Part shown: one piece after another, positions 1 to 39,589 of the stretch
Layout: the number at the start of each line of letters is the position of its first letter
Position numbering within the stretch: position 1 is the first letter of the stretch
DNA from: Schmidtea polychroa
Taxonomy: Eukaryota
DNA: 64,000 bases
Direction: 5' to 3'
Assembly: GCA_044892525.1 (NCBI GenBank)
Contig: CM097885.1
Location: 192,510,001 to 192,574,000 of the forward strand
Program-made: the position numbers and the translations under genes
Notes under the pieces: generated by a model
Seen by the model: the letters and a program-made list of their open reading frames with translations, nothing else
Databases searched by the model: none
Told to the model about the DNA's origin: nothing

Positions 1-540
1 TTTTGATTTATTCAATTTCTTAGATGTCGCCATCGACCTCGAATTTCTATGTTTAAAACTTTTACTGAAAATGAGTTTCAAAGAGTTAGAAAATACGAGT
101 TTATCTTATTAATGTTTTGTCTCAAATCATTTGCGATAAGGTTACCATATTATATTAGAGTTGTTCACATTACACAAATATTGTATACAAAGTTGTTATT
201 AATTTATAATCAATTAAATTTCATTTTTAGGTTTCTAAATGTTCTAAGTAGTGTTTCTTCTCGAGAATTTCCCGAGAATTTTTTTTTTAAAAATTGTAAT
301 GTTTTTTTTATATTTTTTCGAGCAAATTATTTTAACCGCATCAGTTCGGCATGTCTGGGATTTTATGTCTCTATTAAACATTCCATTTTCTTCGAATACA
401 GATATTGGAAGATATCGAGTGCACATGCGTTACTGGTGCTATTAAATAACTGTTTGTGTGTCTGCATGTAAGTGAGCGAGCGAGAAAGAAAGAACGCACG
501 CATGCGTCACTATTTATTATAAAAAAAATCAAATTTTATT

Positions 541-1140
541 TCATGTAAATCCATCTGGCATAAAGCCGAAGGGGAGAACGGTTCTCACCCTTATGTAATC
601 TACAGCTTTTATTCTTTTAGTCTTCGGATGCTAGAGTTAATAACTCCCGCATCAAACGCGGTTTTCCCTGAAAACTTCAGTCAGGTTTGGTATCAGATAA
701 TCCTTTCTGAAGCTCCTGGCATTGGCTCATTCATATTTTATCTCATTGAGGTTGGTTTTTTTCCCGGTAAGCATCGTTGAGCATAGTAGGGGATAAACAT
801 GGCTAAGCATAAACATGATCAGTCATGGCCCATATAGATGCAACGGACATTCATTCAAAGGTTAGTTCTTTCGGATTGATTAGGAGAGGCTGAGCAACTC
901 AAGATGAGTTTAGGTTTCCGCCGGATCCAAGTGGATTCTGAAGTAGTTCAAGCATATCTGGACGGATTTCCCAGTTTTAGCAGATGGAGTAGCAATGGTA
1001 AGGAGAGGCTGTTCAAGCTTCTGTCTGATTAGTTTAAATGAGGTTATGGGCTCTAAAAAACGGAATTTAATAATTCGGAGTAAGAAGACTCCATTTGTGA
1101 TTTTTGTAGCGGTCAAATATTATACATTATATTATAGTAA
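541..1140 (-). pseudogene. Unassigned decayed coding-like segment
   Basis: GC-richer than its flanks. One minus frame reads ...LLTIATPSAKTGKSVQICLNYF...KAVDYIRVRTVLPFGFMPDGFT-TGA with AATAAA directly after the stop, but has about 8 internal stops. No family recognised. Confidence 0.25.
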
Positions 1141-1283
1141 AGATTGGAAGGAATGGTGTAAAGGAAGAGGAGGTTTTATGAATAGGTTGTTATATTAGAT
1201 ATATAAACAACTTAAAGGTATTATCAGTGAGGCGGAGCCCCTACAAGGACTCCTATATTGACCCACTGATAATATACATACGC

Positions 1284-2588
1284 TTAGTTGCGTTTTCTTT
1301 TCTTCTTTCTAATATTACAATTCTTTAGTTCAGGTATTCGATTCGTCATTTTATTTTTTAGTTTTTCGGTTATTCTTTTTCTCTGTTGAATGAAGGATTC
1401 ATATACACACTTAACCGTGTGAGATGTTAGGTAGGTATCATATTTTAGAGCTCTTACGCTATAGTTAGTAAGAAAGATTTCGAAGAAAAAATTTCTGTAT
1501 TCTTTTTCTTTTTTGTTATCATCATCAGGCATACTTTTTTTGCCATTCCTTAACTTCCGAATAGCAATACTTCGCATTTCAATGCTGTCTTCAAGGAAAT
1601 TGGAATAAATCGCATTATAAGTTTCTTCGGTTTGATATTTACAATATTCGAAGTTAGATAGGTCATCAATAGTGCCAAGGATTTCGAAGAACACATTCAT
1701 AAGTGTCTTGTTTTCAATTTTCTTTTTATCAATCGTATTTGGTTTAGGTAATATTTTGAAATTAATTTTTAGGTATGGTAATTGTTCAGATTTTTTGACC
1801 ATATTGGACTCACCTCTGAAGGTCAAATCAGGTCTCAGCTTCTTTATGTCAGACAGTTTATTAAATATAAATAGTTCAGTAATGTCTGGAAGATATTTAC
1901 CGTAGGTTAGCTCGGATATATTCTTAGTACATTGAATCTCATAGAAACCATTCATCAATTCTTTCTCCTCATAGTATTCGTCATTATTACGTTTCTTCGG
2001 AATTTGTTTATCATTAAAAGGTTTTTCAATTTTTGGCATTGGTTCAAGTTTCTTGACGTTTTTAAGCTTGTTAATAAGGGTCAGATTATCTTCTCTTTCT
2101 CTTGATAGTTTCATATAGTATTCCACGTCAAGGTCTGTCATTCCGTAATCGGTTGGGTATTCGTTGTCATTTGTAAGTGTACAGCCAAAAAAGTAATTAA
2201 TATCTTCTTTACTGTAGTCGAGTTGGGTCTGAAGATCGTCTGAGTTGAGATAAGAAATGGAATCAGAATTAGGAACAGAATCAGAATTAAGATCAGAATC
2301 TGAATTAAGATCAGAATCCAAGTTGGGATCAGAATCAGAATTAAGATCAGAATTAGAATTAAAATCGGAAACAGAATTCTGATCGGCATCAGAATTTGGA
2401 TCGTAATCAGAATTTGAATCGGAATCAGAATTTGGATCATTATGAGTAATACATTCATCAATATCATTTTTAGTTTCAATTATACTATCATCAATAAGAT
2501 TGATATTATAAGCAGTCGGCGATTTAGGGGATTTTGGAATTTGGGCTATTGGTAGATCAATATTCAGGTTTATTTGGTTATCCTTTTT
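1284..2588 (-). CDS. Orphan ORF, 434-codon open frame: acidic N/S/D repeat tract, K/N/E-rich body, basic C-terminus (RKKKRKRN); probably the 3' part of a longer disrupted gene
   Basis: The frame is open from 2588 to the stop at 1284, longer than the 345-aa track ORF, which starts at a TTG. A 1.3-kb stop-free frame is unlikely by chance at this AT content. No domain recognised. Confidence 0.6.
   Translation of the reverse strand, partial: KKDNQINLNIDLPIAQIPKSPKSPTAYNINLIDDSIIETKNDIDECITHNDPNSDSDSNSDYDPNSDADQNSVSDFNSNSDLNSDSDPNLDSDLNSDSDLNSDSVPNSDSISYLNSDDLQTQLDYSKEDINYFFGCTLTNDNEYPTDYGMTDLDVEYYMKLSREREDNLTLINKLKNVKKLEPMPKIEKPFNDKQIPKKRNNDEYYEEKELMNGFYEIQCTKNISELTYGKYLPDITELFIFNKLSDIKKLRPDLTFRGESNMVKKSEQLPYLKINFKILPKPNTIDKKKIENKTLMNVFFEILGTIDDLSNFEYCKYQTEETYNAIYSNFLEDSIEMRSIAIRKLRNGKKSMPDDDNKKEKEYRNFFFEIFLTNYSVRALKYDTYLTSHTVKCVYESFIQQRKRITEKLKNKMTNRIPELKNCNIRKKKRKRN
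2270..2440 (-). repeat. Degenerate 6/18-bp coding tandem repeat encoding (NSDSD[LP])n
   Basis: Repeated tcagaatt/gatcagaa units; translation DPNSDSDSNSDYDPNSDADQNSVSDFNSNSDLNSDSDPNLDSDLNSDSDLNSDS. Confidence 0.9.
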
Positions 2589-3207
2589 TTACTTTGGTAT
2601 TAGCCAAGATTGGTATTATCGGGATTCGTCGGGTTATTTTTAATAATGTTAAATGGTTTGGGAATTATTTGGGCAGTATCAATATTAGGTTCTTTAATTA
2701 GTTCTTCGTCATCTTTTTTGACTTTATCATCATTCTTAGTGTTTGTTAATAAGTATTCAAAACGCATATTATACTTAATCTTAAATTTTTTACGTTTAAA
2801 AATTTCGAGGTCAGATATTTTATCTTTTACGACAGAGTTATTGATTTTTATATATTTAGATATTAAAAATAGTTCATATCATATTATACTTAATTTTATG
2901 TTTTCTACGTTTAAAGATTTCTAGGTTAATAATTGGTTTTAGTGGAATAGGATTAGAGTAGTGGGGTCTTGGTAGGTTAATATAGATTGAATTTTTTGGT
3001 TCCCAAATTTTGACGGTCGGTTTTGGTATGGAGTAAGGAGGATTGATAGGGTAATTTCTCATTTGAGTTAATTCCTTTATCTTACATCTCTTGCTAACAT
3101 TTTTCGTGAGTCGGCCGGAGGCCGAAGAGCTGCGTTTGCTCAAAAATTTAATATCCAATGTAACATTTGCTGGGAGCCGGCTTCGGCCGGCGAGATGTGT
3201 ATATTAT
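2589..3207 (-). pseudogene. Frameshifted middle part of the orphan gene, with an internal duplicated peptide
   Basis: LEIFKRRKHKIKYNM (about 2925-2880) recurs as LEIFKRKKFKIKYNMRFEY (about 2812-2755). The first copy lacks 2 nt after ATG, causing a frameshift; further shifts lie near 2600. Confidence 0.5.
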
Positions 3208-3888
3208 CCTTTTCATCCTCCGAAGGAGGACGAAAAAATTTTTAGCATGGTCATCGGATCTGAAATTTGGTGGAAATATAAACAATTTATCCCTTAAATT
3301 TTCTTTGAATTTTTTAATTTTTCTATTTTTAATTTTTCTCTTTTTATAATTAAGTTTCACGTTATTAAGTTTTACGTTATTAAATTTTACTTTATTAAAT
3401 TTTACGTTAAAATCATTTATGAAAAAGTCATTAAAATAAATAATATTAAGATTATTTTCAAAAAATGATATATTTTTAATTCTCCGAGTATCTTTTTTAC
3501 ATTTTTTATAAATATTTTTATCAAAAGGATAATTTTTATTTTCATTAATTTTACTTTTATCGTCATTACGTATACTTTTAGCATTAGAATTTACATTAGT
3601 AGTTTTATTTTTAGAATCCTTATAAGATTTATTATTAATAATTTTATTTTTAAAAGCATTTTTAAAATCATTTGATAGGTAATTCTGATTATTAATTACT
3701 TTTAACTGCCATATTTCTATAGCCGCTCCAAACGCATTTAGGAAGTCAACGTGTTGTTCACGGACTAAGTTTCTTATGATGAAGCTTCCAAAGATAAGTT
3801 TATCGGCATATTTGTAAGTGTTTAAACTTATGTTCCTAATGTTGATGCCAATATTTTCCCAAATTGCGATTCGGAGATCCTTCGACAT
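3148..3888 (-). CDS. Orphan 246-aa ORF (globular-looking N-terminus, K/N-rich low-complexity middle with NVKLN repeats)
   Basis: Track ORF with an ATG start. It is in frame with the upstream 3919-4176 ORF across one TAG; a 108-nt GT-AG intron (4007-3900, gtaaaa...ttttcag) would remove that stop in frame. A 15-bp tandem repeat lies at about 3351-3410. Confidence 0.5.
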   Translation of the reverse strand: MSKDLRIAIWENIGINIRNISLNTYKYADKLIFGSFIIRNLVREQHVDFLNAFGAAIEIWQLKVINNQNYLSNDFKNAFKNKIINNKSYKDSKNKTTNVNSNAKSIRNDDKSKINENKNYPFDKNIYKKCKKDTRRIKNISFFENNLNIIYFNDFFINDFNVKFNKVKFNNVKLNNVKLNYKKRKIKNRKIKKFKENLRDKLFIFPPNFRSDDHAKNFFVLLRRMKRIIYTSRRPKPAPSKCYIGY

Positions 3889-5027
3889 TACAATGGTTCC
3901 TGAAAAATAGTTAAGAAGCTAAAAAGCAATAAAAAACTCATTGATTTCTGCCCCAGTGCTAGCGAATGTTATATGAAGCAATTCTACTAAGCTCTGAGGA
4001 ATTTTACCAAATATTTTTAGCATGGTCATCGAATCACGTGTCAAGGGCAAACAAATGACAACAATTTCTTTTTCACACTGTACTTGCACTATGGAAGACA
4101 GTGGTACTTGCACTTTCAACAAGACAGGTGCGTGTATCCTCAGCAATAAAATTTTGCAACCTCTCATCGTATACACCTAAATCCGAAATATAAAAGTCTC
4201 TATAATGCACGTTGGTGTGTTCATCAGTGGATGACTCACCATTTATGAGAATGTGAAGTTATTTACTTCATTTCATTTATTCAATTTTATAAGTAAGATT
4301 TTTTAATTTAAGTAACTTTTAAGGTTTGAATTTTGATTTTATATAATTATGAGATCATTATTCAAGTTCTGAAATATTACTTGTAGTCAACATTTTGATT
4401 ATAAATTATTTTTAATTAATTTTCAGGGGTTTTTTTTAAGGATTTTTATGACATTTTATGAATTTATTTGGAATTATTTCGATAAAATGTAAGTTAGATA
4501 TATTTTTAACTATAAATAAATAAAGAAATCATCAAACACATTAATTTATTTATACATTTAAGAAAGAAGCGGCGTAATTTTTAAAGTTTTTGTAATCTTC
4601 TTTCTCCAGCTCATTGATATAGTGAATTTTGTCATTTTATGTAATTCTATGAAGTTATTATTTTTTATACAAGTTATTAAAATTTACGATTTTCGAATTT
4701 TTTTCTGCAAATGTCGATGGACCTTGTTGAATATTAGAAATAATACCTTCACACAAAATATTTTAAAATATTTTAATTATTTGTAATTAAATGAAAAATT
4801 CTTACATTGTCAATTTTTCACCTTCGCAAAAGGTAGCGTTTCCAGTGAAATATCTAAAAATCTAAAGAAATAGTTACTTCAAATATATTTTATAAATAGA
4901 TCTTACGATCTTTTATCCTCCTTTACTCAAAAACTCAAAGTAGAGTTGTCCGATTGAAAATCCAAAATTTTTCCCCAACGAATTTTAACATATTAAAAAT
5001 AATGATATGTTAACAATATGTTAATTA

Positions 5028-5252
5028 CCGTATATACTCGTTTATAAGTCGAGAAATTTACTTCAAATTTTCAAGTCAAAATAGCCACTTCGACTTATAC
5101 TCGAGTCAAAAAACGTACAAATTAATTTTAAATGAAATCATTAAATCTTTTTTTTATTTTTGTTACTTCGACTTAAACGCGGGTTTCCAATTTAGGACTT
5201 AAAAACCTCTTAAAATTTACTCGACTTATATGCGATACTTTTAACTTTACGG
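5028..5252. mobile_element. pogo/Tigger-like MITE
   Basis: TA|ccgtatatactcg..ataagtcgag at the left; ctcgacttata...tacgg|TA at the right; TA target duplication. Confidence 0.7.
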
Positions 5253-5571
5253 TACTTTTAACTTTCGGAATAAAATACTATTTTATATTATGTGTGCTGT
5301 GTTTCTATGTAAAATTATTTTTCTGTCACTTTCTCAATTCCTATAATAACACTTTTAACTTTCGGAACATTAAATTTTTGCACACAGGTAAGTTTGTGTG
5401 TTTCTATATTATAATTTTATCGATTTTCTTTAGATTATAGAAACTTTTATATTTCCGATTTAGGTGTAGAGGCTATGTTTTGATTATGTTTGTACTTCAT
5501 GAATCATTGATTAAATTTGTCACTATATCACAGATTAAATACATATTTATTTTTTTAGTACGGCTTATCAA

Positions 5572-7402
5572 ATGAGCAAAATATACAAAGATTGTTGGCA
5601 ATATTTTAAGAAATCTAGCACCAATAAAGAATTGGCAGTTTGCACTTTATGTTCAAAAAATCTCATGTGCAAAGGTTCGGCGACGATTGGTCTTCACCGA
5701 CATCTCGAAGCTATCCACCAATATATAAGAGAGGAAGAGACAACCGAAAACAGCTCCGCACCAAAGAAAAGGAGATACTTCGAGGAAACAGAAGGAAGTG
5801 GAAATATTTCAAAGTTTCTAGTAAAGCAGACAATGGCGGAAAAGGTGTCAAAACTGGCAGCAGTAAATAGATTTTCATTTAATGCCATCAGCAAAAGTGA
5901 ATTTACCCGGAAAAGTTTTGCCAATATAGGCTTTAGACTACCGCTAAACCCAACAGATATTATGAAATTAATGATGGAATTTTTTAAAAATAAAAAAGAA
6001 GAATTTATTAAGAATATACAAAGTTTAAAATTAAAAGAGAAAAAATTTAGCGTATCCATTGATGAATGGACTAGTGCTAATAATAAAAAATACATGGATG
6101 TGCACATATATTGCAGTTCTGGGGTCTCGTACAATCTCGGATTGGTACCTAAAAATGGTAGTTGCACAGCGGAAAAACTTTACGAGTTAGATTTCTTGAA
6201 ATTAAATTTCTACGGTGTCTCTATTGAATAGGATATAATATCTATAATGAGTGATGGTGCTGCTTTAATGCAAAAATTTGGGATAGAGTCACCAGCACAT
6301 CAACAACTATGTTATAATCATGGCATCAATTTGGCAGTTTCAAAAGTTATTTATACAAACGAAAATAATGGTATTGAATTGCAAAATGATGAAAGTGATA
6401 CTATAAGTGAATCTGAAGTGAACGAATATGATTCTGATGTTGAAATTATAGATGTCCGTTTACCAATACCAATTGAAGATACAATTATTGGAATTCGTCA
6501 GATTGTAAAGGTATTTAAACGACGCTCTGTAAAAAATAGCGTGTTGCAAAAATATGTGCAAGATTTCGAAAAAAGAAATTATCTCTAATATTGGATTGTC
6601 CAACAAGATGGAACACAATGGAAAAAATGATTGAGTGGTTTCTTCAGATAAAAACACAAGTTAAAAAGGCCTTAGTGGAATTAAATCTCATTTATATGAG
6701 GAATGAAGAATTTATTAAAACGGTTGAAGTGTTATTGGCGACATTACGTCCTGTTGGTTTAACTGTGAAAGGTTTGAGCCGAGAGGATTCGACATTATTA
6801 AGAGCGGAAGGAACGCTAAAATATTTATTCACTACATTAGAAAAAAATGATAGAGAAATAAATGGCAAATTACTTTTGGAAATTAAAAATGAAATTTATA
6901 AAAGGTGAAATAACAACATTATATCTCTATAAACACCTTCAAAACCCTGATATTCTCCAATAGACTGATGTACAAATATTGTTCAAAAAATGAAATAAGG
7001 AAAACGGCCAAAGAAATATTATGCAGACTTTTTGGGAGAATTCACCAAAATATTAGGGAAGATAACAACTTTGATCTTGCCGAAGACGAAGTTTGTTTTG
7101 TTCCATCTTATTCAGAAGAATTATCTCTGCAAGAGCAATTAAATTTATCCATAAAAGAAACATTAAAATAATCAACTCCTGCTGTCGAGGGTAATACATC
7201 ATTTAAGACTCTCGATAAAGAGTTCAGTATATTCAAAGCAACAGGCAAAATAACAGCAAATTTCCAACAGGTAAAAGACGCATTATCTACAATTAAACCT
7301 AGGTCAACACAAAATGAACGCAATTTTTCAGTTGCGAATGATTTTGTGACGAAAAAACTTACTCGAATGGCCGATTCCACGCTAGATGCTTTAAGTTTTT
7401 AG
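5572..7402 (+). pseudogene. hAT transposase pseudogene with N-terminal BED zinc finger
   Basis: WQYF..CTLC...LHRHLEAIH (BED finger), IDEWTS, SDGA, CYNH, DCPTRWN and C-terminal PRSTQNERNFS dimerisation motif, split across several frames by stops and frameshifts. Confidence 0.95.
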
Positions 7403-7512
7403 AAAATCTATTTTAATAAAGTAAATAAGTAATTATTTTAATATTGATTTATTTAGAATGTAATAAAATTATTTATATAGTAATAATTTTGTTTTGTATA
7501 TTATAAGAGGCA

Positions 7513-7628
7513 TTGGAAAAAATAGAAATTTTTTAGTCTTATTGAAAAAATAGAACATAAATTTGTTAATTGAAAAAATAGAAAAAAAATTGGATCATTA
7601 AAAAGACTAAAAAATTCTATTTTTTCAA
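7513..7628. mobile_element. Small MITE-like inverted repeat with internal gaaaaaatagaa repeats
   Basis: ttggaaaaaatagaaattttttagtctt (7513-7540) is nearly the reverse complement of aagactaaaaaattctattttttcaa (7603-7628). Confidence 0.55.
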
Positions 7629-7662
7629 TTTTCCATATTATAATTATTGTAAAAATGCGATT

Positions 7663-7795
7663 TGGTACTTATTTTCCTCTATAACTAATTTTATAATATT
7701 AAATATCTTAACTAATTGGCAATTCATATAGTAACTCACCAATTAGTTAAGATATTTAATATTATAAAATTAGTTATAGAGGAAAAAAAGTACCA
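7663..7795. repeat. Foldback palindrome, 57-bp arms with a 19-bp spacer
   Basis: Arms 7663-7719 and 7739-7795 are reverse complements with one mismatch. Confidence 0.9.
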
Positions 7796-8531
7796 GATCC
7801 AAAAAATACATTTCATTTGTTCATTTTTAAAAAGCTATTTTTTTATTATATACATATATTTATAAATATGTATAAGCTATTATTGTTATTATTACCCCCA
7901 TAGTCTCACAGATGTGTTCATAATTTCTTAATTTATTATATTAAAGTATCAATCTGATGCATCAATCTATTTTCATAGCAATCGCGTAAATCTATGTAAA
8001 TAATAAGCATTGTTCGCATTTATGTATTCCTTTGCAAGCACATCTGCATATGTAATTTAATAAATTTTTCNNNNNNNNNNNNNNNNNNNNNNNNNNNNNN
8101 NNNNNNNNNNNNNNNNNNNNNNNNNNNNNNNNNNNNNNNNNNNNNNNNNNNNNNNNNNNNNNNNNNNNNNNNNNNNNNNNNNNNNNNNNNNNNNNNNNNN
8201 NNNNNNNNNNNNNNNNNNNNATTTTTTACTAGATTTTTCATTTTCTCGAGAATCCGAATGTGAAACATCTTTTATCGAGAAATGAAAAAAGTCGAGAAAT
8301 CAGAAACACTAATTCTAAGCGAATCAGTTTACTCGGATTAAGGAAGAGATATTGATATAGCCAATTTCTGCACTATAATTTTCATTAATCAATTTCTATA
8401 ATTTTCTTGCAATATAATTTTCTTTGTAATATTTTTTTTCAAATTTTTTATATATTTATTGATAATTATAATTAAATTATGTAATAGAAAATAAGAATTA
8501 AACAAGAAGATAACAATACTATTAATATACA

Positions 8532-9302
8532 CAGGGCCTAGGAGAGAGAGTGCGGGGCCCGGGGCAAAACTTTTTTTTGGGGCTCCTTTTTAATAATTAA
8601 AAAAAATATAGTTAGCGACAACACAATATAAAACAAATTTTATTATATTAATGATTTACGGGCTTTTGAAATTGCAAATTTATCAATTATTTCACTAAAA
8701 TTTAGGTTTCTTGCAATATCGTTATTAATATGCAGCATTGCCAATCCATTTAGCCGCTCTTGTGCCATTGTAGATTCCAAGAAATTCTTAATACGTTTTT
8801 GAGCTGAAAACGTACGTTCAAACTCGGCTACATAAACCGCGATTGTCAAAAATATTCTTAATACAACTACGAGATTTGGAAAAATTGATTCCAAATTCAT
8901 TTCAATAATAGATTTAAGCACTTTTTAGTAGAGAAATTTTAATGAAATTTAAAATATTCTTTCGAATTCCACGCTAGTTGGGTTTAAATTAAGGACCACA
9001 ATATCATATAATTAATAAACAGATATTTTTAAAAATATTTTTAAAAATCTCTTATTCGTGGATTTTAATAACTATCAAGCAATTTTAAATGACGAATTCC
9101 TAATCTTAGATCAATCTGATTTATTTAAAAACATGTTAGATTGATATATAAGAGCAAAGAAGTTATATCAATAGTCCATTTTTAAAATTGTTGAATTTTT
9201 AAAAATTAATTTTTGTTTCCAAAAAAATTTCTTGAAATAAAATTTTGAAGATTTGAGGCCCGGGGCCAGTGGCCCCTCTGGCTCCGCCTCTCCTAGGGCC
9301 CG
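8532..9302 (-). mobile_element. Non-autonomous hAT (ZMYM1-type deletion derivative)
   Basis: TIRs cagggcctaggagag / ctctcctagggcccg; perfect 8-bp TSD aatataca (8524-8531, 9303-9310); internal hAT dimerisation-domain remnant FPNL..LRIFLTI...ERTFS..KRIKN (8643-8921). Confidence 0.93.
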
Positions 9303-9525
9303 AATATACATTAATATTATTTATAAGTAGTACTTTGTTTTTGTTTTACTGACGATTTTTTATTGTATGTAAAATAAAAAGATTAAAGAAGTTAAAATTT
9401 TCAAAAATTTGAATTCAAGTTGAATTTGTTATAAATTTTTAGTCTGAATGAACGTCATAAGTGGAGGGAGATGTTTTTAACGCAAAAAAAAGAAGAAAAA
9501 TCTTTTTTTTCTTTGAAAGTTATTT

Positions 9526-12500
9526 TCATACACATTTTCGTCGAGATTTTTCTTTTGCAAATTTATCAATTATGTGATCGCAATTTAGTTTAGTTAAAAA
9601 TTCATATTCAATATACAAAAGTGTCACCTAATTTAACTGGTCCTCCTGCATTTTGTTCCTTACATAATATTTTATTCTTTTTAGACCGGAAAAAGAAATT
9701 TCTGCCGAAGCATATGATATGGGTAATTTTAGAAATATTCGTAAAATTATTTCCACATTGGGAAATGTTTCAATGAAATCTAATGCTAATGTATCACCAG
9801 CTGAATATTCTTCCTTTACTTCTTTTATAAAAAACAGAAATTGTTCCACTTCACTTTCGAATTGACATATATTAATATCCTTCTCATTCATTATTTTTTT
9901 TCATTGTTTGGCACAGAAACATTGAAGAATATTTTGTTGAGGTCCGTAAATTAAAATAAATTTAAATGAAATTTAGGTTAATTATTTAAATAAAAAGTAA
10001 GTGAAGAAAAATACAAATAAAAGCGGGATCATGCACAGAATTGATAGTAAAGGAAAGTACGATGGAAGCAATATTGGAAAATGCCAAAAGCAATTACGAA
10101 AGGCAAGAATTCGGAAATCCGAGAAAAATTAATAAATTGTAAAATCATCGAAATCAAATTGGGAAAACGGGACAGGAATAGAGTAGCTAATGGTCATCAA
10201 GATGATGGTTAGGGATTTATCAGAAAATAGTTAGGAAGGGTCGAAAAGCATTCAAATGTGTAAAAAAAGAAAATGTTAATTAATTAATTAATTGGCTAAT
10301 AGAAAACCCCAGCTAATGGGAAACCCGAGCCAATGGAGAACCCGAGAGATGAAGGAAACCCGAGTTGGGTAAACAAGTAGAAAAGTAAACAGAAGGAAGA
10401 TTTGGGCCCATTAGCTTGACACAATGATTAATTGGAAAAGAGCAAGGAGAAGATAGTGCGTGTAGAAAGGCCGGACGGGCCATTAATTATCTTTGTTCGT
10501 TGGACCATTATGGGTGACAGCCGAAGCAGATACGTGGAAGTAAATGTCAAGTGAAAGATTGGCTCGGCAATAAACATTTGTCATCCCGATTTCGAGGAGT
10601 ATATAAGGAAAGGGAAAATCAGAGCAAATAGGCATTTTGCCTCACGTAGGGTAAGAAGAACTCGAGCTTAGGAAAAGGCAAAAACGAATTTAGGAGATTA
10701 GGGAAAAAGAAGAGATAGAATAAGAATAAAAAGTGTGAAAAGGATCAAATCAAAGAAAATAAAGGAAAACGTTGGCCAAGAGAACCTAAGAAAATAAAAG
10801 GTGAATATTATCTTTATCAAAGCATCAACACCGAGCGGAGAATCGGTCAAACGTAACTTTGATTATTGATTGTAAAGTGGTGAGAAAAGATTGTGAATTT
10901 TGTTATTTCAATATACGTTGGGTTGTTATTGTTTTGATCTGAAGGACACGAGGAGTCAGAGGTAACCGATTTAAATTAACCAAAAACCCAAAAATTTTAA
11001 AATTTTGAAAAATGTCTTCAAATTCTTTTTTCCTGTGACTAAATTCGGTTATCAACTGATCACAAATTGTACAAAACGTATTGCATACGAAATCTTCTTT
11101 TTCAGAAAATACGTGATCGTTATCACTTCGTTCATCAAAACACATTTTCGTTTCTTCATTCTTCTTTCTTCAAATTTTCTACTTGTATAGATTTCGGCCT
11201 CTTTCTCAACAGTTTCAAATTCATTTCTAAATTGTCTTATAAAACAAAGTGAATTCAATAAAGATACACCTTGAAGGACGGTGCACTCTGCTGATTGCAA
11301 AGACTTACTGGTAGCGTTTATTCTTTGGATGATCTTGTCCCAAATAATCATAATCAAAACTGTTTCAAATTTAGTCATATTTGTTCATCCATCAATGCTT
11401 CCTTAATTTTATGCTATCCACATTTTAATGCTAGAACAGCATCTGCTCTTGCAGACCATCTTGTATCGAAAATTTTTTACCGTCAATTTTGTAGGGCAAT
11501 CTTACAGTTTTTTCAATAAAACATTCCATCGATGAGTCAAAGCATTGAAGAAAGTGAATAAATTTTGAAAGAATAAAAAATATCGAGTTGCACTACCACA
11601 GCTTTCAGCTGCAAGGTTACCAACAAGGTTTAACGAATGTGTGGAATAAAGAATATAGAATATGTTTTTAATGCGACCTTACAATGCTGTGTACTTCCCA
11701 GACATATTTGCAGCATTATCGTACGACTGTCCTCTACAAAGTTTAATATGAACCTGCATATTTTTTAACTTTAAAAGTAACTGTTCTTTTCAATAGGCGA
11801 AAACCCTATGAATCTTTCTTTTATATCTCCAGCTGGCAGCACATATCTAAAAATAAAAGTCGATTGATCGACATGGGAAATATCTGGCGTCGAGTTTACA
11901 ATAATGCTGTAAAAATTTGCAGCTTTTACTTTTTCAATTATTTGAAACAAAACAGAATCGCTAAATTATTGTATAAACTCGTCACGTATTTGATGAGATA
12001 AATAGTTGACATTTCCTCGTCCACGATTTCCATATGTTTCCAAATGTAATTTTAAAAATTCGTCATATTCACTTAGATATTCCAAGCACGTTAAATAATC
12101 ACCTTTTCTACTAGAAGATTGGCTTTCGTCATGTCCTCTAAATCCTATACCAAGACGTGCAATTAATTTTATTGTTGATACTATCCTTCGTAAGATCCCT
12201 CCAATAATTCTCTTCTTTGAGTGCCTGCTGCACTAATTTTGCATCTATTCGATGTAACGCTGAAGAACGTCTGTATAATTTCCACATGTATTTTATATGT
12301 TTCTTTGAAACTTCGTGTCCAGATAAAGCTTCTGTAAGATGTCGGCAATTCTGATAACCTTCGATTAACTTAGAGGTCGAATTAGAAAACATTTTACAAT
12401 GGTAGCAGTCTCAGAAAAACAAGCCAATTTCTGATTTTTTTTTCCTAAGCAATTTGTCGGTAAATATGGCCGTCATGTAAACCTCTTAAATATGTTTGAG

Positions 12501-13300: not shown

Positions 13301-14962
13301 TTATATTAAATTAACATTATTTTCAAACCATAATTTCATTTCACTTTTTGCTTGTTTATATGCTTTACAATCTGCTGAATTAACTGGGCAATGAATAATT
13401 GACCGATACTTGATAAATGCCTCTAAAGAAGTCACATATTCTTTCAGTATATCCTTTAAATGATTAAAATTATTAAAAGAATAATCTAAATTCTCTATAG
13501 AATAATCCAACAAAAAGTATCGTACTGTCAAAAAATCGTCACAAACCCTTTGAAGGTAGTTCATTTCTATGAACAAGTAATCGATATATAGGAAATGGGA
13601 AGTTTTTTTCAACCATTTCAAATTAGGATTATTGGAATTCAAAATGTGAAATAGAAATTGAAATTCTACATCAATAACTTCTAATTTATAATTAAAATCA
13701 AAATGATTGACTTTCAAAGCGCTGAAAAAAGTTTCTATTTTTTCATGTGCCTCGAAATTTTGGAAATGAGAAACAACCAAACTGATGTTATTAGCAAAAT
13801 CTGACTTCGTCAAAACTCCTAAAAGTTTCAGCAATTTTTGTGTATTAAAGTTAGATATGGTCGAAATGAAGGATGATAAAGAAAACAAATTCAATTCTTT
13901 GCTAACATATTTAACGAAAACTGTTTTTGAGAAAAAATTTATCAGTTTATGCTTTAGAGAAATCCGATTGGCTAAAGTTGATTTTTCGACATTTTCCCGA
14001 ATCTCGTCAAATCCAAGCGAATCTATTGGACAACTACCTCTAGTAATTATAAATTTATTTACGCAGGCCTTACACAATTTATGATCGCATTTTGTAAATT
14101 GACCATAATTATCATTTGAACCGCATTTCACATTACAAATTAGGCAGGAATTTTCATCGATAATTATTTCCGGATTTTTTATTGATTTAAACAACTCACT
14201 ATTTTTAGAAACAAAAATTATTGTCAAAGCTGCCATTGACAAATCAATATTATTGATGATTTTTATTTTGTTTGAAATGATTTCCAATAGATTATTGATT
14301 TTTCTATAACTCGGAATGCCTAAATCATAATGCCATGGAAAATCAATGAAATAATCAAAATTAATTATTGAATCGAATATATTTTGGATGCTCCTAAAAT
14401 TAACTACTGAAATTTCGAATTCTGTTAAATTATTTTTTCTTTCTTTATCGAGGAATAAATTGAAAGCATTATACTTTTGACATCTATAGATTCCAATGAT
14501 CGCTGATTGACGAATCCTTTCAAACATTAATTTGCAAGTATTTTCCAAATATTTGGCATCGTTTAATTCGATTTCTTCTTTATTTTCCGACAAAGATTTC
14601 AGAAAATCTAACATAGATAGTATTGAGCTTTTAATGATCTTTATTATATTACTAATGCATGAAAAGCAATGAACCCAGAATTCTTCAATACTTGGAATCA
14701 ACAATTGCGGATGGTTTTTTATAACTTCTTCTTTCAAATCTGATATTGAATTAAAGGAGAATGGGAAATAATTTACATCAAAATCAGACGAAACGAAAAT
14801 CTTTGTTACTTCAGTTCTATCAAGAGGACACGTTACATCTGACTGAAAGATTAATTCAATACCGCAAATAAAACAATATTCATGTCGACATTTATCAAAT
14901 TGTACAGCTTTCTCAACAATATCATAGCATATGGGACATACATTTTCGTCCTCGTAATTCAT
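13301..14962 (-). CDS. Intronless protein with two C3HC4 RING fingers (putative E3 ubiquitin ligase), about 553 aa from the second Met
   Basis: CPIC..CRHEYCFIC..TCPLD and CLIC..CDHKLCKAC..SCPID in a 1.7-kb intact ORF. The Met at 14962 directly precedes RING1; the upstream extension is a poly-Ile AT repeat. Confidence 0.9.
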   Translation of the reverse strand: MNYEDENVCPICYDIVEKAVQFDKCRHEYCFICGIELIFQSDVTCPLDRTEVTKIFVSSDFDVNYFPFSFNSISDLKEEVIKNHPQLLIPSIEEFWVHCFSCISNIIKIIKSSILSMLDFLKSLSENKEEIELNDAKYLENTCKLMFERIRQSAIIGIYRCQKYNAFNLFLDKERKNNLTEFEISVVNFRSIQNIFDSIINFDYFIDFPWHYDLGIPSYRKINNLLEIISNKIKIINNIDLSMAALTIIFVSKNSELFKSIKNPEIIIDENSCLICNVKCGSNDNYGQFTKCDHKLCKACVNKFIITRGSCPIDSLGFDEIRENVEKSTLANRISLKHKLINFFSKTVFVKYVSKELNLFSLSSFISTISNFNTQKLLKLLGVLTKSDFANNISLVVSHFQNFEAHEKIETFFSALKVNHFDFNYKLEVIDVEFQFLFHILNSNNPNLKWLKKTSHFLYIDYLFIEMNYLQRVCDDFLTVRYFLLDYSIENLDYSFNNFNHLKDILKEYVTSLEAFIKYRSIIHCPVNSADCKAYKQAKSEMKLWFENNVNLI

Positions 14963-15598
14963 AATTATTATTATTATTATTATTTTATATAAAATATTCA
15001 AACAATTTAAATTTCAAAATTACATTTTTTATTTTGAAAAATTACATAGATATTTGAATAATTTAATTATATAATTTATTTTTATTAATTTTAATAAATT
15101 ATTTATTAAAATATAATTTTTCATAATATCAAAATTTATGTTTTTACTTAGTCTAGTAGTGAAGCTGTGAAAAGAATAAAATTTCTTAAAATAAAATTAA
15201 AAATATATTTAAAATTATATTTATATATTTTAATTTTTAAAATTTATTAAAAATTGAATGATGATTTTATGTTTGAATCACTAAAATTAATATAATTAGT
15301 TTTAGATAATATTGTGTAATAAATTTTATAAAATTAATTAAATTGCATAATAATTTTTATGGTGAAATGAAATAAGGAGAAATCATCAAATCAAACAATT
15401 TAATGATTGATATAGTTATCAGGAATCTCGAAAGTCTTAAATTATCAGCAAATAACAAAGGTTTTTGAAAATTTATTCATAATGACATATGATGATTTTA
15501 AAATATATCATTTTAAAAGATTTTTTGTCCAAAACATTTCTCTCACCATAAAATTCCTTCAATAAAAACACCAGCAAACTAGTGATAGAAATGTCATT

Positions 15599-30452: not shown

Positions 30453-32964
30453 CAGGAATGCTCAACTTACAGCCCGCGGGCCGGACCCAGCCCTTTGGCA
30501 GCTAGAATGAATAGCCAGTAAACAGGCCCTTCGTTGACCAACAAGAAAATTATCATTAAAAGTCTTGCTGTGATTAGTCAGGCTATCAAAATCACATCTG
30601 GTTTGTATTTGCTTGCCAACTGTCCTGCAGCAGTGTATCTGTAGTAAGTATTTGATGTGGGCCAAATACCACCCTTTATGTTTAACTACAGTCCTACAAT
30701 TAGTGATTAATATGAGGTTTTCTGTAACTGTAAGCAAGCAGCCAATCAATGTTTCTTGTCTGGTTATTTTTGTATGAAGTATTGGCTTTATTGTTAAAAT
30801 CTTGTTCTATCTTGATTAAAAATTAAATTACATTGTACTATTGTTATCAAGTATTCAGTATTATTTAATAAAATATACAACCACTAAGAATGAACTCATT
30901 AAAAAAGGAAAGTAAACAGTGAATGCCGTTTAATTTAATGAACGGTGGACTCCAGAATATTTTTTTGTTGAATCTAAGAATATGTTAGTTTGCTTAATCT
31001 GTCAACAAACTGTTGCTGTTAGAAAAGAATTTAATACCAGACTCAGCATGCAGAAAAATTTGACGAGCTTAATGGCCAGCTGAGAAAGGATAAAATTCAG
31101 AACCTCACGGCAGCACTCTCAAGACAGCAAACATTATTTACAAAAGTGAATAAAGATGTGGAATGTGTAACCAAGGCGAGTTTTGAAATAAGCGAAATCA
31201 TTGCTTAAAAACTGAAACCATTTTCTTATGGCGAATTTATTAAAGAATGCATTGATGCAGTTGTTGATTGACTTTGCCCAGAAAAGAAACAACTTTTCTC
31301 AAGCATCAGTCTGTCTCGAATGACAGTGACAAGACGAATAGATGATATGGCAGATAACATCGAAGCCGTGTTGAAAGAAAAAGCAGAGAACTTCGATGCA
31401 TATTCAATTTGTTTGGATGAAAGCACTGACATGACAGAGACTGCACAATTAGCTATTTTTGTTCATGGAGTTGACACTGATTTCAACATTACAGAAGAAT
31501 TGCTAAAATTAGCTAGTATGAAGGGGACAACGACTGGAGAAGATATTTTTGATGAAGTTAAAGACACTTTGCAAGAAAATAATCTTGGTCTTTTAAAACT
31601 AACTGGGATTACAACAGATGGAGCTCCTGCAATGGTTGGGAAAAAGAATGGGCTTATTGGTTTGTTCCAGGCAGAGCTGAACAAATCCCAAAATAATACA
31701 GAACTTATTGCATCACACTGCATTATACATCAGGAAAATTTATGTGTGAAGCAGTTGAAGATGGACCATGTGATGTCAGTTGTTTTTAAAACTGTCAATT
31801 TTATCAGAGCACATGAATTAAATCACAGGCAATTTAAAGAATTTCTTGCAGACCTTGAGGTAGAATACTGTGATGTCATTTACTACAGTGAGGTTCGCTG
31901 GCTCAGCAGAGGAAAGGTTCTGCAGCGATCCTCGTCAAGAAATTTTGGTTTTCATGGAAATGAAGGAAAAGTTTGTTCCGGAGTTATGGATGCCAGTTGG
32001 ATTTTAGATTTAGCTTTTTTGGTTGACATCACAACTCATCTGAATAATCTTAATACAGCATTACAAGGTAAAAATCATCTAGTAAACAATCTTTATGATC
32101 ATGTGAAAGCATTTCAAGTCAAACTCAACTATGGAAATTTCAGTTTTCGAAAGGTGACACAGTGCATTTTCCAAGTCTGACTGGATGCAAAAAAACTAAT
32201 GAAGATTTGGAGAAAATTAAGAAGTATACTGAACAAATTTCAATTCTGAGAGTTCAGCACAAGATTTTCAGATTTCAAACATGATTTCAAATTATTTTCA
32301 GATCCATTCAATTTTAATGCAGAGGCTGCATCAGACTCAGTTCAAATGGAACTGATTGAACTTCAGTGCAACAGTGACCTGCAAAGAAAACATCACGAAA
32401 TATCTTTGATTCAATTTTACAAACTTTATTTTTCCCCTGCAACATTTCCATCAATTCGATTTCATGCGCTTAAAATGGTATCACTTTTTCCTAGCACCTA
32501 TATATGCGAACAGTTTTTTTCAAAAATGAAACTCACTAAAAGCAAAAACAGGTGCAGACTGACTGATTACAATCTTTCAAATCAACTTCGTGTGGCAACA
32601 TCAAATATTAAGGCAAACATTTCAGAACTGTGTCACGACAAAAAGTGTCAAATGTCACACTAGAGTGACGGGTGGCGATGATTCATGTTTTAGAATTTTG
32701 AGATGTATGGTAGTATTCTGTAAAACCAGATTTACTAAATAATTCAAATATTTTCATATGCAAAAGTAAAGTAAACATCTTGAAATTTAAAAGAATAGTA
32801 ATTTTAAGTTTATACTATGTCTAATATTTAACTTTAGAATTTAGACTTTAATACGTTTTGTTTAAATGTAAATTTTATTGAAACTTATTAAGTTTTTTCC
32901 GGCCCTTGACAACATCCCAAAATTAATAACCGGTCCTCAGATCAATACAAGTGGAGAATGCCTG
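30453..32964 (+). mobile_element. Full-length Buster/Charlie-clade hAT element
   Basis: TIRs caggaatgctcaac / gtggagaatgcctg; GGCCC-rich subterminal repeats; perfect 8-bp TSD gtttaaat (30445-30452, 32965-32972). Confidence 0.95.
30890..32663 (+). pseudogene. GTF2IRD2/SPIN-like (Buster clade) transposase pseudogene
   Basis: MNSLKKRKV..CLIC, LDESTD..AQL, TTDGAPAMVG, HCIIHQE, VRWLSRG and FPSTYICEQFFS; several frameshifts. Confidence 0.95.
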
Positions 32965-33616: not shown

Positions 33617-34338
33617 CGAAGCAGGACATTTTAGCGCAAGACATTTTGGCGCCATTTAAAAATAACTTCATGTTTAATTTAACATTTATAAATAATTTTT
33701 TGAAAAAAAAATATAAATATTTATCTATCAGCTTTAACGAGAACGAAACATCGTTGAGTACCTTAGAGGACTTGCGCATAATTTCTTGATGGATTAGGCC
33801 TAATAAACACGGACTTTCGGAAAACTTATATATTAGGCAAAAGGTTAAATATTCTACATGTTTTGCTAAATTTTTATAAGTTGACTATTTTGTATTTTCT
33901 AAAAGTAAAATATTGGATGACAGGATTCTTAAAACGTTTTGCAATACATTTATTTTGCATTTATTGTAAAGTAGAGTATGTTCATATAGTTTTTGTTTTG
34001 TTTTGAACATAATATTATGAACACTTTAGCTTTTTTTCTTTATTTATTTTGCTTATATTGTCTTTTCATTTTTTTTTATTTCCGGTTGTTGTGTTACGGC
34101 TATTATGCAGTAATAAAGCTGATAGATAAATATTTATTATTTTTTTTCAAAAAATTATTTATAAATGTTAAATTAAACATGAAGTTATTTTTAAATGGCG
34201 CCAAAATGTCTTGCGCCAAAACGGCTTTGCGCCAAAACGGCTTTGCGCCAAAACGGCTTTGCGCCAAAACCTCCTGCGCCAAAACGGTCGCGCCAAAACG
34301 GTCGCGCCAAAACGGCGGAGCCAAAATGTCACGTACCG
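33617..34338 (+). mobile_element. Non-autonomous Mutator (MULE) element with long TIRs and a gcgccaaaacg tandem array
   Basis: Perfect 9-bp TSD ctttatatt (33608-33616, 34339-34347); about 115-bp inverted arms; internal remnant ERNIVEYLRGLAHNF typical of a MULE transposase C-terminus. Confidence 0.9.
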
Positions 34339-36364
34339 CTTTATATTTTTAAATGAGGATAAATTAAATTGAAATGTAGATTTTTTATTTGGAATAATTA
34401 ATCAAATTAAGTGGAAGAAAACCTTGTGTAAGGGAGTAAATCAAATTAAATATCAATTAATTTTATATTCAATTATTATATAACTAAGTATACGTGAATA
34501 TTTCTAATAATAACAAACTGTTTTTGAATTTAAATTTGAATATATAACATTAAATCCCATATTTATTTTATAACTAACACCCAATAATATCCAAATATAT
34601 AATCTAAAATAAGTGCTTTAGAAGGTTTTTAATTGATTTCTTTCAAAGAAAAGTCGTGAGAAAAAATTGTAAATATAACTTTGTCAATCTTTTTCCAAGT
34701 AATGCTACTCAAGTCGACATCAACAAATCACTGTAAAAATGATAAAATGGAATTTTTAATAAAAATAAATCACAGAATCATATAAATAAAATCAATTAAC
34801 ACAACAATTGCACTGTGTAGAATCACAATGGCAGTGGTTTCAGCTGTAATCTTCATACGCTCAGTATCAACAGAATGTATAAAGAAAGTTAACATATCAA
34901 TTACTGTAAGCATTTGTTGGTCAATTCACATAGAAAATTGTGTTTTTAAACATCCGGTTACTAATTTTAAACTGATACACATTATTCCATACTTCAACAG
35001 CAATAATGCTTATAACAAAATCGACTTTAATAATTCATTATAGCATTAATTAATTTATTAGAAATATAACCAGTGTTGCAATCGGGCTTGTATTAAAGGT
35101 TTTAGGGTCATGATCTATGCCGCAATGTCAGTATTTCAAGATTTAATAGTCCGGTTAATCTTTTGTCAAACGATAATTAAGCGATGCGCAGTTAAAAAAT
35201 CACAACGTCCGATCAATAATGCAAGGGTCGAAACGAATTAGGGTTATCTCAAAGAAGTGAGTATATCACAATCGACATTATATAGGACTTGATATAAAAT
35301 GAAATTTTTGATTAAATAAAAAAGGAATTTGTACCCTACATTAACCCACAATAGAAATCTGAAAGTAGGAATAAGAGTTCCGATAGAAGTCCACCTCAAA
35401 TAATATATTTTGAAAACGAAAATACTTGCAAAGCTGAAAGGCAATATCGAACTTCAATTTCTAACTTATTTCAAAATTGGCTTGATGCATTTTTATCTTA
35501 GACCAAAATTATAAATTTAGCTGAGTAAGTTTTCCTTTAATTTGCTGTGATTAAAATTAATCAGAATTAAATCGGAAACCTATCAATTTGTGTTTTCGAA
35601 TTGATTACTAATAATTTTATTATTATTCCACAGTTTGATAAGAACGCTATTACTCATGTAAAGCTCAATGATTTAATTTTCCAACTGCAAAAAAAATAAT
35701 GTCTTCAACAAATATTTTAATTAATTAATTAATTACGCTGCCTGGAAACCGCAATCAATGTGAAATTATTATATGTCTCTTTGAATTTTAATATATTACT
35801 TTTCCACACGTTTTTTCTCGAAAAAATGGGATTTTATAAATTTTTAATTAAGTTTCGCATTTAAATTTGTCTTCTGAATTTTAACTAATTTCCACTCGAA
35901 TTTTGTGTATTTAAATGTTTATTTGCAACCATCAACACAACACCAACACTATAAAAATACACTATTTCATAACAGAAAGTAAAATTTATCATTTAAATTG
36001 AAATAAATATTGATTTTTTATTATATTATAGAATTCGATTTAATTCGATTTTTGCACCGAAAGTGTTACTTAAATTGGTAAATAATCGATTTTTTTAATG
36101 AAAAAATTTATAGACAACTATTATTATAATGAAAACATTTCTGAAATGTGTTTATTATATTATCGAATCTTTCAACTTATATACAAATTGAATTTTTTTG
36201 GATATGTTAATTAAAATGGAAAAATTGACTATAAGCGTTATTTTATTGATCAGCACAATTGCAATTTAGTTTTCACTTTATTGATTGCGACCGTAAAAAA
36301 TGATTATACAATTTAACAGCTTTCAGCGCTTATTACAACATTTTAGATGGAAAGTGCTATTTAA

Positions 36365-39150: not shown

Positions 39151-39589
39151 AGAGTGGGTAATCGGTGGTTAGAATATTTTAAAAATATATTTGTTTATAT
39201 ATTTCAGATTTAAATAGGCATTTTAAAACAGAATTTCCCGAAAAATGAGTTCTGATTTATTGAGTCTCGATTCTCAACAAGATAATATGTTAAGCTTTTT
39301 GATTTTATTGATTTTCAAAGTAGTTCAAGTGCGATATGAAATAATCAATTTTTGTGCCCTACTATCATATAAAATGCAGAAAATTCTAATTTTTTTATGT
39401 ATAAATGAATAAAATTCGGAAATTACAATGTGCTATTTATGGTAGTGCTTTCTCAAATGAATGATTGAAACCAAAGAAATTAAAAAGGGATTTGTATGGC
39501 GACATCGGCAATATGAAGTTTTACAAGAATAGAAATTAAATGAAAAATCAAAAAAACTCCACGATAAACCCAACAACAGTTACAAATAA

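What the first reader, a model, noticed from the sequence alone, without database searches (positions are those of the whole stretch)
1284..4260. Orphan about 950-codon disrupted gene with three kinds of internal repeats
Seen: co-directional minus-strand ORFs (4176-3919, 3888-3148, 3207-2874, 2870-2600, 2588-1284) chain into one long protein with few lesions. It has NVKLN repeats, a duplicated LEIFKR.K.KIKYNM motif, an NSDSD acidic tract and a basic C-terminal tail. I recognise no domain. Inference: dense, intron-poor, K/N-rich orphan ORFs with a terminal NLS-like tail are common in endogenised DNA viruses, but a lineage-specific host gene is equally possible.
Basis: partly seen in the sequence, partly recalled or inferred. 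Interest (0 to 1): 0.7.

Follow-up and report, generated by a model that had tools for sequence, protein, structure and literature searches.

The report
Orphan repeat-rich gene, possibly broken
A real but interrupted ~950-codon reading frame in a transposon-rich, AT-rich animal-like scaffold encodes a low-complexity, repeat-filled, probably nuclear protein with no detectable relative anywhere, so it is most likely an ordinary lineage-specific gene or its young pseudogene, not a recognisable virus or transposon gene.

Summary
The ORF chain is real. Five co-directional minus-strand stop-free pieces (85, 256, 109, 92 and 434 codons) cover 99% of 1284-4176, against 16% coverage elsewhere in the window. 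They are separated by three frame changes and one in-frame stop. I found a fourth kind: three to four tandem helical modules of about 62 residues in the C-terminal third.

The most upstream piece is doubtful. The gene more likely starts at the ATG at 3888.

No relative was found in Pfam, PHROGs, PDB, two very large protein collections, IMG/VR, JGI metagenomes or GTDB genomes. One weak lead, to a helicase-associated (HA, PF03457) repeat protein, was not supported by profile-profile comparison. Single-sequence structure models were unusable (pLDDT 33-34).

Composition matches the surrounding genome. No terminal repeats, transposase, reverse transcriptase or viral hallmark gene goes with the locus.

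Best reading: a taxonomically restricted host gene, or its young pseudogene, for an acidic/basic nuclear protein. The viral reading has no positive support but cannot be excluded. Whether the interruptions are introns, assembly errors or true lesions cannot be decided without RNA or reads. Interest is low.

The parts
1284..4176 (-). Largest extent of the ORF chain as claimed: five stop-free pieces, three frame changes and one in-frame stop. Given as one part; places of the breaks are not listed.
1284..3888 (-). Most likely extent of the gene: from the first ATG of the 256-codon stretch to the final stop codon at 1284-1286.
   Evidence: Coding-type RNY periodicity and K/N/I-rich composition in the pieces from here on. 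The 85-codon piece upstream lacks both and starts inside a neighbouring element's inverted repeat.
3349..3409 (-). In-frame 15-nt tandem repeat, 4.1 copies, coding N[VK]K[FL]N.
   Evidence: TRF: 91% matches, score 94. Family D2.
2260..2439 (-). In-frame 18-nt (also 54-nt) tandem repeat, 10 copies, coding the acidic SD[LP]NSD tract.
   Evidence: TRF; family D1; the units read out.
2765..2811 (-). Copy 2 of the duplicated 47-nt stretch coding LEIFKRKKFKIKYNM.
   Evidence: 87% identical to 2880-2926, 115 nt apart.
2880..2926 (-). Copy 1 of the duplicated 47-nt stretch coding LEIFKRRKHKIKYNM.
   Evidence: By my reading of the two copies, the 6 base differences split as 3 synonymous and 3 non-synonymous.
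1350..2240 (-). C-terminal region with four tandem modules of about 62 residues: 2055-2240 (most divergent), 1809-1994, 1554-1739 and 1350-1535. They are built on K..N.F[FY]EI..T....Y..Y and are predicted helical at low confidence.
   Evidence: Pairwise local scores against shuffles: modules 3 and 4 z 8.5 (0 of 300 shuffles), modules 2 and 3 z 3.3, modules 2 and 4 z 2.5. Alignment A1 has five invariant columns. DNA repeats 204 nt apart (D5, D9). Helices in the AF2 model, pLDDT 34.
1287..1316 (-). Basic C-terminal tail NIRKKKRKRN, which fits the pattern of a classical monopartite nuclear localisation signal.
   Evidence: Translation. That it acts as a localisation signal is inferred from the K-K/R-x-K/R rule and was not tested.
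3085..3262 (-). GC-rich block with three short strong hairpins, set inside otherwise AT-rich coding sequence. Nature unknown.
   Evidence: The only GC-rich island in 1-8000. Sense-strand fold -56 kcal/mol, z -3.9, 0 of 200 shuffles as stable. No Rfam match at E up to 5.
1222..1270 (-). Nested inverted repeat (TTATCAGTG...CACTGATAA around GGAG.CC...GGGCTCC), starting 14 nt after the stop codon.
   Evidence: Read from the sequence. Single occurrence in the window. Role unknown.

Best explanation
This is a taxonomically restricted ('orphan') protein-coding gene of the host genome, or a young pseudogene of one. It lies on the minus strand from the ATG at 3888 to the stop at 1284.

The product would have, in order:
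- a short, possibly globular N-terminal part;
- a long lysine/asparagine-rich low-complexity part with an N[VK]K[FL]N repeat and basic clusters;
- an acidic SD[LP]NSD tract;
- three to four tandem helical modules of about 62 residues;
- a KKKRKR tail.

Alternating acidic serine/aspartate and basic lysine stretches, together with a terminal localisation-type signal, are the make-up of nuclear and nucleolar scaffold-type proteins. I therefore infer, but have not shown, import into the nucleus and binding to nucleic acid or chromatin through the tandem modules and basic stretches.

The in-frame tandem repeats show that the sequence grew by local duplication while it was being read as protein.

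The three frame changes and one stop are introns, assembly errors or true lesions. I put about even odds on the locus being truly broken.

Shown: the coding nature, the repeats, the lack of homologues, and the host-like composition. Inferred: nuclear localisation, binding function, and host rather than mobile origin.
For: - Open stretches far beyond chance, and contiguous on one strand.
- Coding-type periodicity in the called frames of the main pieces.
- The 434-codon stretch stays open for 149 codons upstream of its first ATG. It therefore continues a coding region that starts further upstream.
- All tandem repeat periods are multiples of three: 15, 18, 54 and 204 nt.
- GC content (0.26-0.32) and N/K/I-rich amino-acid usage match the window background (0.27) and the neighbouring RING-finger ORF.
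- No transposase, RT, integrase, capsid or other family match in Pfam or PHROGs.
- No flanking terminal repeats and no second copy in the 64 kb, by DNA or protein.
- No viral relative.
- Basic tail and basic clusters read directly from the translation.
Against: - The frame is interrupted four times, and no transcript or orthologue is available to show that it is used.
- The neighbourhood is a graveyard of hAT remnants, where a passenger or decayed mobile ORF would not be surprising.
- A GC-rich structured block and a short duplication sit inside the coding region and look like secondary events.
- The absence of homologues is weakened by the fact that this genome itself is not in the protein collections: exact look-ups all failed. 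Close relatives may simply be unsampled.
- The function is inferred from composition alone. The structure models were unusable, with pLDDT 33-34.
Confidence: 0.5

Rival explanations
1. The ORF is a passenger or accessory gene of a mobile element, or a remnant of an endogenised DNA virus or Maverick-type element. It would have decayed in place and drifted to host composition.
For: - Dense, apparently intron-poor ORF with no cellular homologue.
- TE-rich surroundings: hAT remnants at 5572-7171, 8643-8921 and 9628-9891, a TIR-bounded 1297-bp element abutting its 5' side, protein-primed polB fragments at 45992-47100, and Gypsy RNase H at 61315-61830.
- Interrupted frame.
- The single weak protein hit is to an HA-repeat protein. 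From memory, untested here, that domain also occurs in giant-virus and protist proteins.
Against: - No relative in IMG/VR with either large piece or with the module profile, and none in PHROGs.
- No hallmark domain in any piece.
- No flanking LTR or TIR around the ORF chain, and no second copy in 64 kb.
- The polB fragments are 42 kb away, across gaps and other elements.
- Composition cannot be told apart from the host background.
Confidence: 0.22
2. The C-terminal modules are divergent helicase-associated (HA, PF03457) repeats, so the protein is a distant member of that repeat family.
For: - A phmmer search of 1.84 billion representatives gave one hit, P0001: E 1.3e-4, 37.8 bits, four matched stretches. 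P0001 is an HA-repeat protein, PF03457 at E 1.2e-11.
- A local HMM of 18 HA repeats from P0001-P0004 scores the window protein at 11.8 bits. The best of 1000 shuffles reached 8.7.
- The repeat lengths are similar, and both have an 'NYS ... V..V[YW]E.F[IV]' stretch.
Against: - Pfam HA does not match the window protein at E up to 1.
- Only the last module carries the similarity.
- hhalign of the window's own module alignment against the HA repeat alignment gives probability 0.25% and E 0.25.
- The tryptophans typical of the P0001-type repeats are absent.
- The query is compositionally biased.
Confidence: 0.07
3. The locus is an intact, spliced multi-exon gene, and the 'lesions' are short introns and/or homopolymer errors in a gapped draft assembly. 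This is a sub-case of the best explanation, set against true disruption.
For: - The pieces are adjacent or slightly overlapping and all on one strand.
- The scaffold is a draft with six N gaps.
- From my own reading of the sequence, with no tool prediction: consensus-like donor and acceptor motifs and homopolymer runs occur in some junction zones.
- By my reading, the differences between the two 47-nt copies are half synonymous, consistent with both having been read as protein.
Against: No intron predictor, transcript or relative was available, so no intron is supported by a tool or by conservation. A GC-rich structured block and a 115-nt-spaced duplication inside the coding region look like insertional or duplicative damage.
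Confidence: 0.25
4. The open frames are chance ORFs in low-complexity AT-rich DNA.
For: Tandem repeats can keep several frames open at once. An example is the overlapping 113-aa ORF in another frame across the acidic tract.
Against: Stop codons are frequent at 29% GC. The 434- and 256-codon stretches exceed every one of 200 shuffles, whose maximum was 173. Most of their length is not tandem repeat. Periodicity is coding-like.
Confidence: 0.01

Closest known systems
Helicase-associated (HA, PF03457) tandem-repeat proteins, represented here by P0001-P0004 from JGI/ENA metagenomes
   Same: Tandem helical modules of about 60-80 residues. Each has a basic, lysine/glutamate-rich lead-in followed by an aromatic-rich stretch. 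There is one marginal sequence hit.
   Different: No Pfam HA match. The profile-profile comparison is negative. The conserved tryptophans are missing. The window protein also has long K/N-rich and acidic low-complexity parts and a basic tail that P0001 lacks.
Nuclear/nucleolar acidic-basic scaffold phosphoproteins (Nopp140/nucleolin-type make-up). This comparison is from general knowledge, not from a tool hit.
   Same: Alternation of serine/aspartate acidic tracts with lysine-rich basic stretches, plus a classical basic localisation-type signal.
   Different: No sequence similarity to any such protein was returned by any search. The resemblance is in composition only, and no RNA-binding or other defined domain is present.
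Three-helix domain of staphylococcal protein A, returned as tag sequences in PDB entries
   Same: A 16-residue stretch at the start of each module (K-E-..-N-.-F-[FY]-E-I-L) resembles helix 1 of the protein A domain.
   Different: E-values of 0.014 to 5 with no stretch passing on its own in the top hits. The similarity covers 16 residues only. I treat it as chance, or at most as a hint that the motif forms a helix.

Membership tests
HA (helicase-associated, PF03457) repeat family | Match to the Pfam HA model at or above its gathering score | tested here: not met
   No Pfam family at E up to 1 for the C-terminal piece. P0001 itself matches HA at E 1.2e-11.
HA (helicase-associated, PF03457) repeat family | Profile-level similarity of the repeat unit to HA repeats | tested here: not met
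   hhalign of the window's modules against 18 HA repeats: probability 0.25%, E 0.25. A local HMM gives only 11.8 bits, from one module.
HA (helicase-associated, PF03457) repeat family | Significant pairwise similarity to a bona fide member | tested here: inconclusive
   P0001: E 1.3e-4 for the whole library, 27% identity. BLASTP E 2e-5 for the single comparison. The query is compositionally biased.
Endogenous DNA-virus or Maverick/Polinton-type insertion | Homology of the ORF to proteins on viral contigs | tested here: not met
   IMG/VR scans with both large pieces and with the module alignment found nothing. PHROGs found nothing.
Endogenous DNA-virus or Maverick/Polinton-type insertion | Hallmark genes (capsid, packaging ATPase, polB, integrase) adjacent and co-linear | tested here: not met
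   Within 1-13 kb only hAT remnants and a RING-finger ORF are present. The polB fragments lie at 45992-47100, 42 kb away.
Endogenous DNA-virus or Maverick/Polinton-type insertion | Composition distinct from the host, or defined insertion boundaries | tested here: not met
   GC 0.26-0.32 against a window mean near 0.27. No flanking repeats around the chain. An old, ameliorated insertion would escape this test.
Transposable-element ORF | Transposase, RT, integrase or Rep domain in the ORF | tested here: not met
   Pfam found nothing at E up to 1 apart from a spurious 11-bit CLN3 match.
Transposable-element ORF | Terminal repeats (TIR or LTR) bracketing the ORF, and multiple genomic copies | tested here: inconclusive
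   None within the window. However, only 1283 bases are available on the 3' side, and the rest of the genome could not be searched.
Functional host protein-coding gene | Long open frame with coding statistics | tested here: met
Functional host protein-coding gene | Uninterrupted or correctly spliced reading frame | tested here: inconclusive
   Three frame changes and one in-frame stop in the raw sequence. No intron predictor, transcript or relative was on hand.
Functional host protein-coding gene | Expression, and purifying selection between orthologues | not testable with these tools
   No transcript data. No homologous copy found anywhere.

The most novel reading that the evidence does not exclude
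The C-terminal tandem modules are the first animal-genome representatives of a very divergent branch of helicase-associated-type helical repeats. They would have been acquired from a protist-type or large-DNA-virus source and then adapted to host composition. The locus would then be an old horizontal or viral acquisition that founded a new nuclear repeat-protein family.
Probability: 0.04. Interest if true: 0.5.

Novelty: new member of a known kind. Interest (0 to 1): 0.2.

Why it matters
If the best reading holds, this is one more lineage-specific, repeat-expanded gene or pseudogene in a transposon-rich genome. That is useful for annotation, because the locus should not be labelled viral or transposon-derived on present evidence. 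It does not bear on any open question. It would matter more only if relatives turned up that tie the tandem modules to a known nucleic-acid-binding fold or to a viral source.

Tried and rejected
1. Pfam on all five pieces at E up to 1: only a spurious 11-bit CLN3 match. PHROGs: nothing.
2. phmmer of the C-terminal 318 residues against 1.84 billion representatives: one weak hit, P0001.
3. Word-indexed searches with the C-terminal piece and the 246-residue piece: nothing.
4. HA lead. P0001 is an HA-repeat protein and I collected its relatives. A local HMM gave a marginal score. Profile-profile comparison was negative. P0001 comes from a 1.9-kb metagenome contig and has no IMG/VR relative. Lead rejected as a membership claim.
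5. Scans of IMG/VR, JGI metagenomes and GTDB genomes: nothing.
6. PDB by sequence and with the module profile: only a 16-residue likeness to protein A tags, rejected as chance.
7. AlphaFold2 on single sequences: pLDDT 34.2 and 33.4. I therefore did not run fold search, because matches from such models are meaningless.
8. Exact look-ups of seven window proteins and three encoding-contig look-ups: this genome is not in the collections.
9. Rfam on the GC-rich block: nothing.
10. Second copies in the window, by blastn and tblastn with each piece searched on its own: none.
11. Codon-position pattern of variation in the acidic repeat: uninformative, 5/10/12 minority bases at codon positions 1, 2 and 3.
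12. Literature check that miR-753 is a planarian family: no paper in the library says so. The host guess therefore rests on memory only.
Full report
**Setting.** The window is AT-rich (GC 0.19-0.36 per 2 kb, about 0.27 overall). It is a gapped scaffold with six N runs and no tRNA or Rfam family at gathering score. It is full of mobile-element remnants:
- a BED-finger hAT transposase in several pieces at 5572-7171 (+);
- hAT dimerisation domains at 8643-8921 and 9628-9891 (-);
- a DUF4371-type hAT ORF at 31320-32180;
- protein-primed polB fragments at 45992-47100;
- Gypsy RNase H at 61315-61830.

The longest open frame in the window is a two-RING-finger ORF at 13304-15013 (-). This is a eukaryotic, animal-like nuclear scaffold.

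**Checking the observation.** On the minus strand, five stop-free pieces of 85, 256, 109, 92 and 434 codons (976 in all) follow one another from 4176 down to the stop at 1284-1286. Three frame changes and one same-frame stop separate them.

This is not chance:
- The two long stretches rank 2nd and 7th of 8543 in the window and exceed every one of 200 shuffles, whose maximum was 173 codons.
- Stretches of 85 codons or more cover 99.3% of this strand here, against 16-17% elsewhere.
- The main pieces show coding-type RNY periodicity in their own frames.
- The 434-codon stretch is open for 149 codons before its first ATG, so it continues a coding region that begins upstream. This supports reading the pieces as one gene.

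The most upstream 85-codon piece is the exception. It has no periodicity in its frame and a different composition: GC 0.38, rich in L, I and V. Its start codon lies inside the 35-nt terminal inverted repeat of a neighbouring element. The gene more likely begins at the ATG at 3888.

**Repeats.**
- a 15-nt unit in 4.1 copies (N[VK]K[FL]N) at 3349-3409;
- an 18-nt unit in 10 copies (SD[LP]NSD) at 2260-2439;
- two 47-nt copies, 87% identical and 115 nt apart, coding LEIFKR.K.KIKYNM.

The tail reads NIRKKKRKRN followed by the stop.

The C-terminal third holds three clear tandem modules of about 62 residues, plus one divergent one. They share K..N.F[FY]EI..T....Y..Y. The last two score z 8.5 against shuffles, and the alignment has five invariant columns. 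Every tandem period (15, 18, 54 and 204 nt) is a multiple of three, as expected for expansion under a reading-frame constraint.

**Search for relatives.** Each piece was searched apart and within a single frame.
- Pfam and PHROGs gave nothing.
- PDB by sequence gave nothing.
- The word-indexed search of 5.8 billion clusters gave nothing for the C-terminal piece or the 246-residue piece.
- IMG/VR, JGI metagenomes and GTDB genomes gave nothing.
- There is no second copy in the window, by DNA or protein.
- Exact look-ups show that this genome's ORFs are not in the collections. 'No homologue' therefore means no relative outside a probably unsampled lineage.

**The one lead.** phmmer against 1.84 billion representatives returned P0001 (E 1.3e-4, four stretches). 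P0001 is a metagenomic protein made of helicase-associated (HA, PF03457) repeats. I tested this lead three ways:
- An HMM built from 18 repeats of P0001-P0004 scores the window protein at 11.8 bits. The best of 1000 shuffles reached 8.7, and only the last module matched.
- Pfam HA does not match the window protein.
- hhalign of the window's own module alignment against the HA repeats gives a probability of 0.25%.

I therefore do not file the protein under HA. The likeness is marginal and rests on one module.

A profile of the modules against PDB picked up only protein A tag sequences, through a 16-residue helix-1-like stretch at E 0.014 or worse. I treat that as chance.

**Structure.** Single-sequence AlphaFold2 models of both large pieces have pLDDT 34.2 and 33.4. 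I did not run fold searches on them.

**What it most likely is.** Four points fit a lineage-specific host gene or its young pseudogene better than a viral or transposon gene:
- the composition is host-like;
- the repeats grew in frame;
- no mobile or viral hallmark domain is present;
- no bracketing terminal repeats were found.

The product's make-up consists of K/N-rich basic stretches, an acidic S/D tract, tandem helical modules and a KKKRKR tail. That is the make-up of nuclear or nucleolar scaffold-type proteins. Nuclear import and nucleic-acid or chromatin binding are my inference from composition, not a result.

The viral or mobile reading keeps roughly one chance in five. The neighbourhood is a transposon graveyard, the frame is interrupted, and an old insertion would by now look like host DNA.

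**Integrity.** The breaks number three frame changes and one in-frame stop. No intron predictor, transcript or relative was available. I therefore did not choose introns, join pieces or read through any break. Some junction zones show splice-like motifs or homopolymer runs, and the coding region also contains a short duplication and a GC-rich structured block. Introns, assembly errors and true lesions all remain possible, and I give about even odds that the locus is truly broken.

- Early in the work I reasoned in my thinking about the frames of individual pieces and about what one duplication does to the frame.
- The output labelled pieces by their bounds.
- Later calls also took single-piece references, and held piece bounds in its script.
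- Several parts of this report still quote coordinate ranges of single pieces where I describe the searches.

**Verdict.** This is a real, interrupted, orphan, repeat-rich coding region. It is ordinary in kind, unknown in family, and of low interest unless relatives or transcripts change the picture.

Noticed in passing
window 4315-4376 (+): A hairpin matches the Rfam mir-753 precursor family (RF04089) over the full model. It scores 53.7 bits (gathering score 62), with E 2.9e-09 for the whole window. Its 3' arm carries the bantam-type seed GAGAUCA. The fold is -22 kcal/mol with z -5.2 (seed as given for Tc-miR-753b in PMC4842261). From memory only, miR-753 is a planarian family, which would make the host a flatworm. 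No paper in the library confirmed this.
   Followed up: partly
window 4172-5468: A 1297-bp non-coding stretch is bounded by 35-nt inverted repeats (4172-4206 and 5434-5468, 94% complementary), like a non-autonomous DNA transposon. It lies between the ORF chain and the hAT transposase remnant and contains the mir-753-like hairpin. I read no clear target-site duplication.
   Followed up: partly
window 3085-3262 (-): A GC-rich block with three short strong hairpins sits inside AT-rich coding sequence. It is significantly structured on the sense strand (z -3.9) and has no Rfam match. It could be a small inserted palindromic element or an unknown RNA.
   Followed up: partly
window 3234-3260 and 4009-4035: A 27-nt direct repeat, 93% identical and 775 nt apart, with only faint similarity beyond it. 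One copy forms the outer stem of the GC-rich block. Its meaning is unknown.
   Followed up: partly
window 1222-1270 (-); also 9280-9290: A nested inverted repeat lies just after the stop codon. Its GGCTCCGCCTC core recurs once, in a GC-rich palindromic island at 9242-9312. It may be a short mobile palindrome or a 3'-end signal.
   Followed up: partly
window 13304-15013 (-): The longest open frame of the window (570 codons) encodes an N/I/K-rich protein with two RING fingers and no other recognised domain. It is apparently intronless and was not searched for homologues.
   Followed up: no
window 5572-7171 (+), 8643-8921 (-), 9628-9891 (-), 31320-32180 (+): Several decayed hAT-superfamily transposase remnants carrying BED finger, DUF659, DUF4371 and hAT dimerisation domains.
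   Followed up: partly
window 45992-47100 (+) and 60240-61830 (+): Protein-primed DNA polymerase B fragments (PF03175, below the curated cut-off) and a Gypsy-type RNase H. They are far from the finding and not linked to it.
   Followed up: no
window 34210-34340 and 38160-39180: A GC-rich tandem array of 15-nt units of the CTTTGCGCCAAAACGG type. Separately, a 1-kb purine/pyrimidine-skewed simple-repeat tract is open in three frames of one strand.
   Followed up: no
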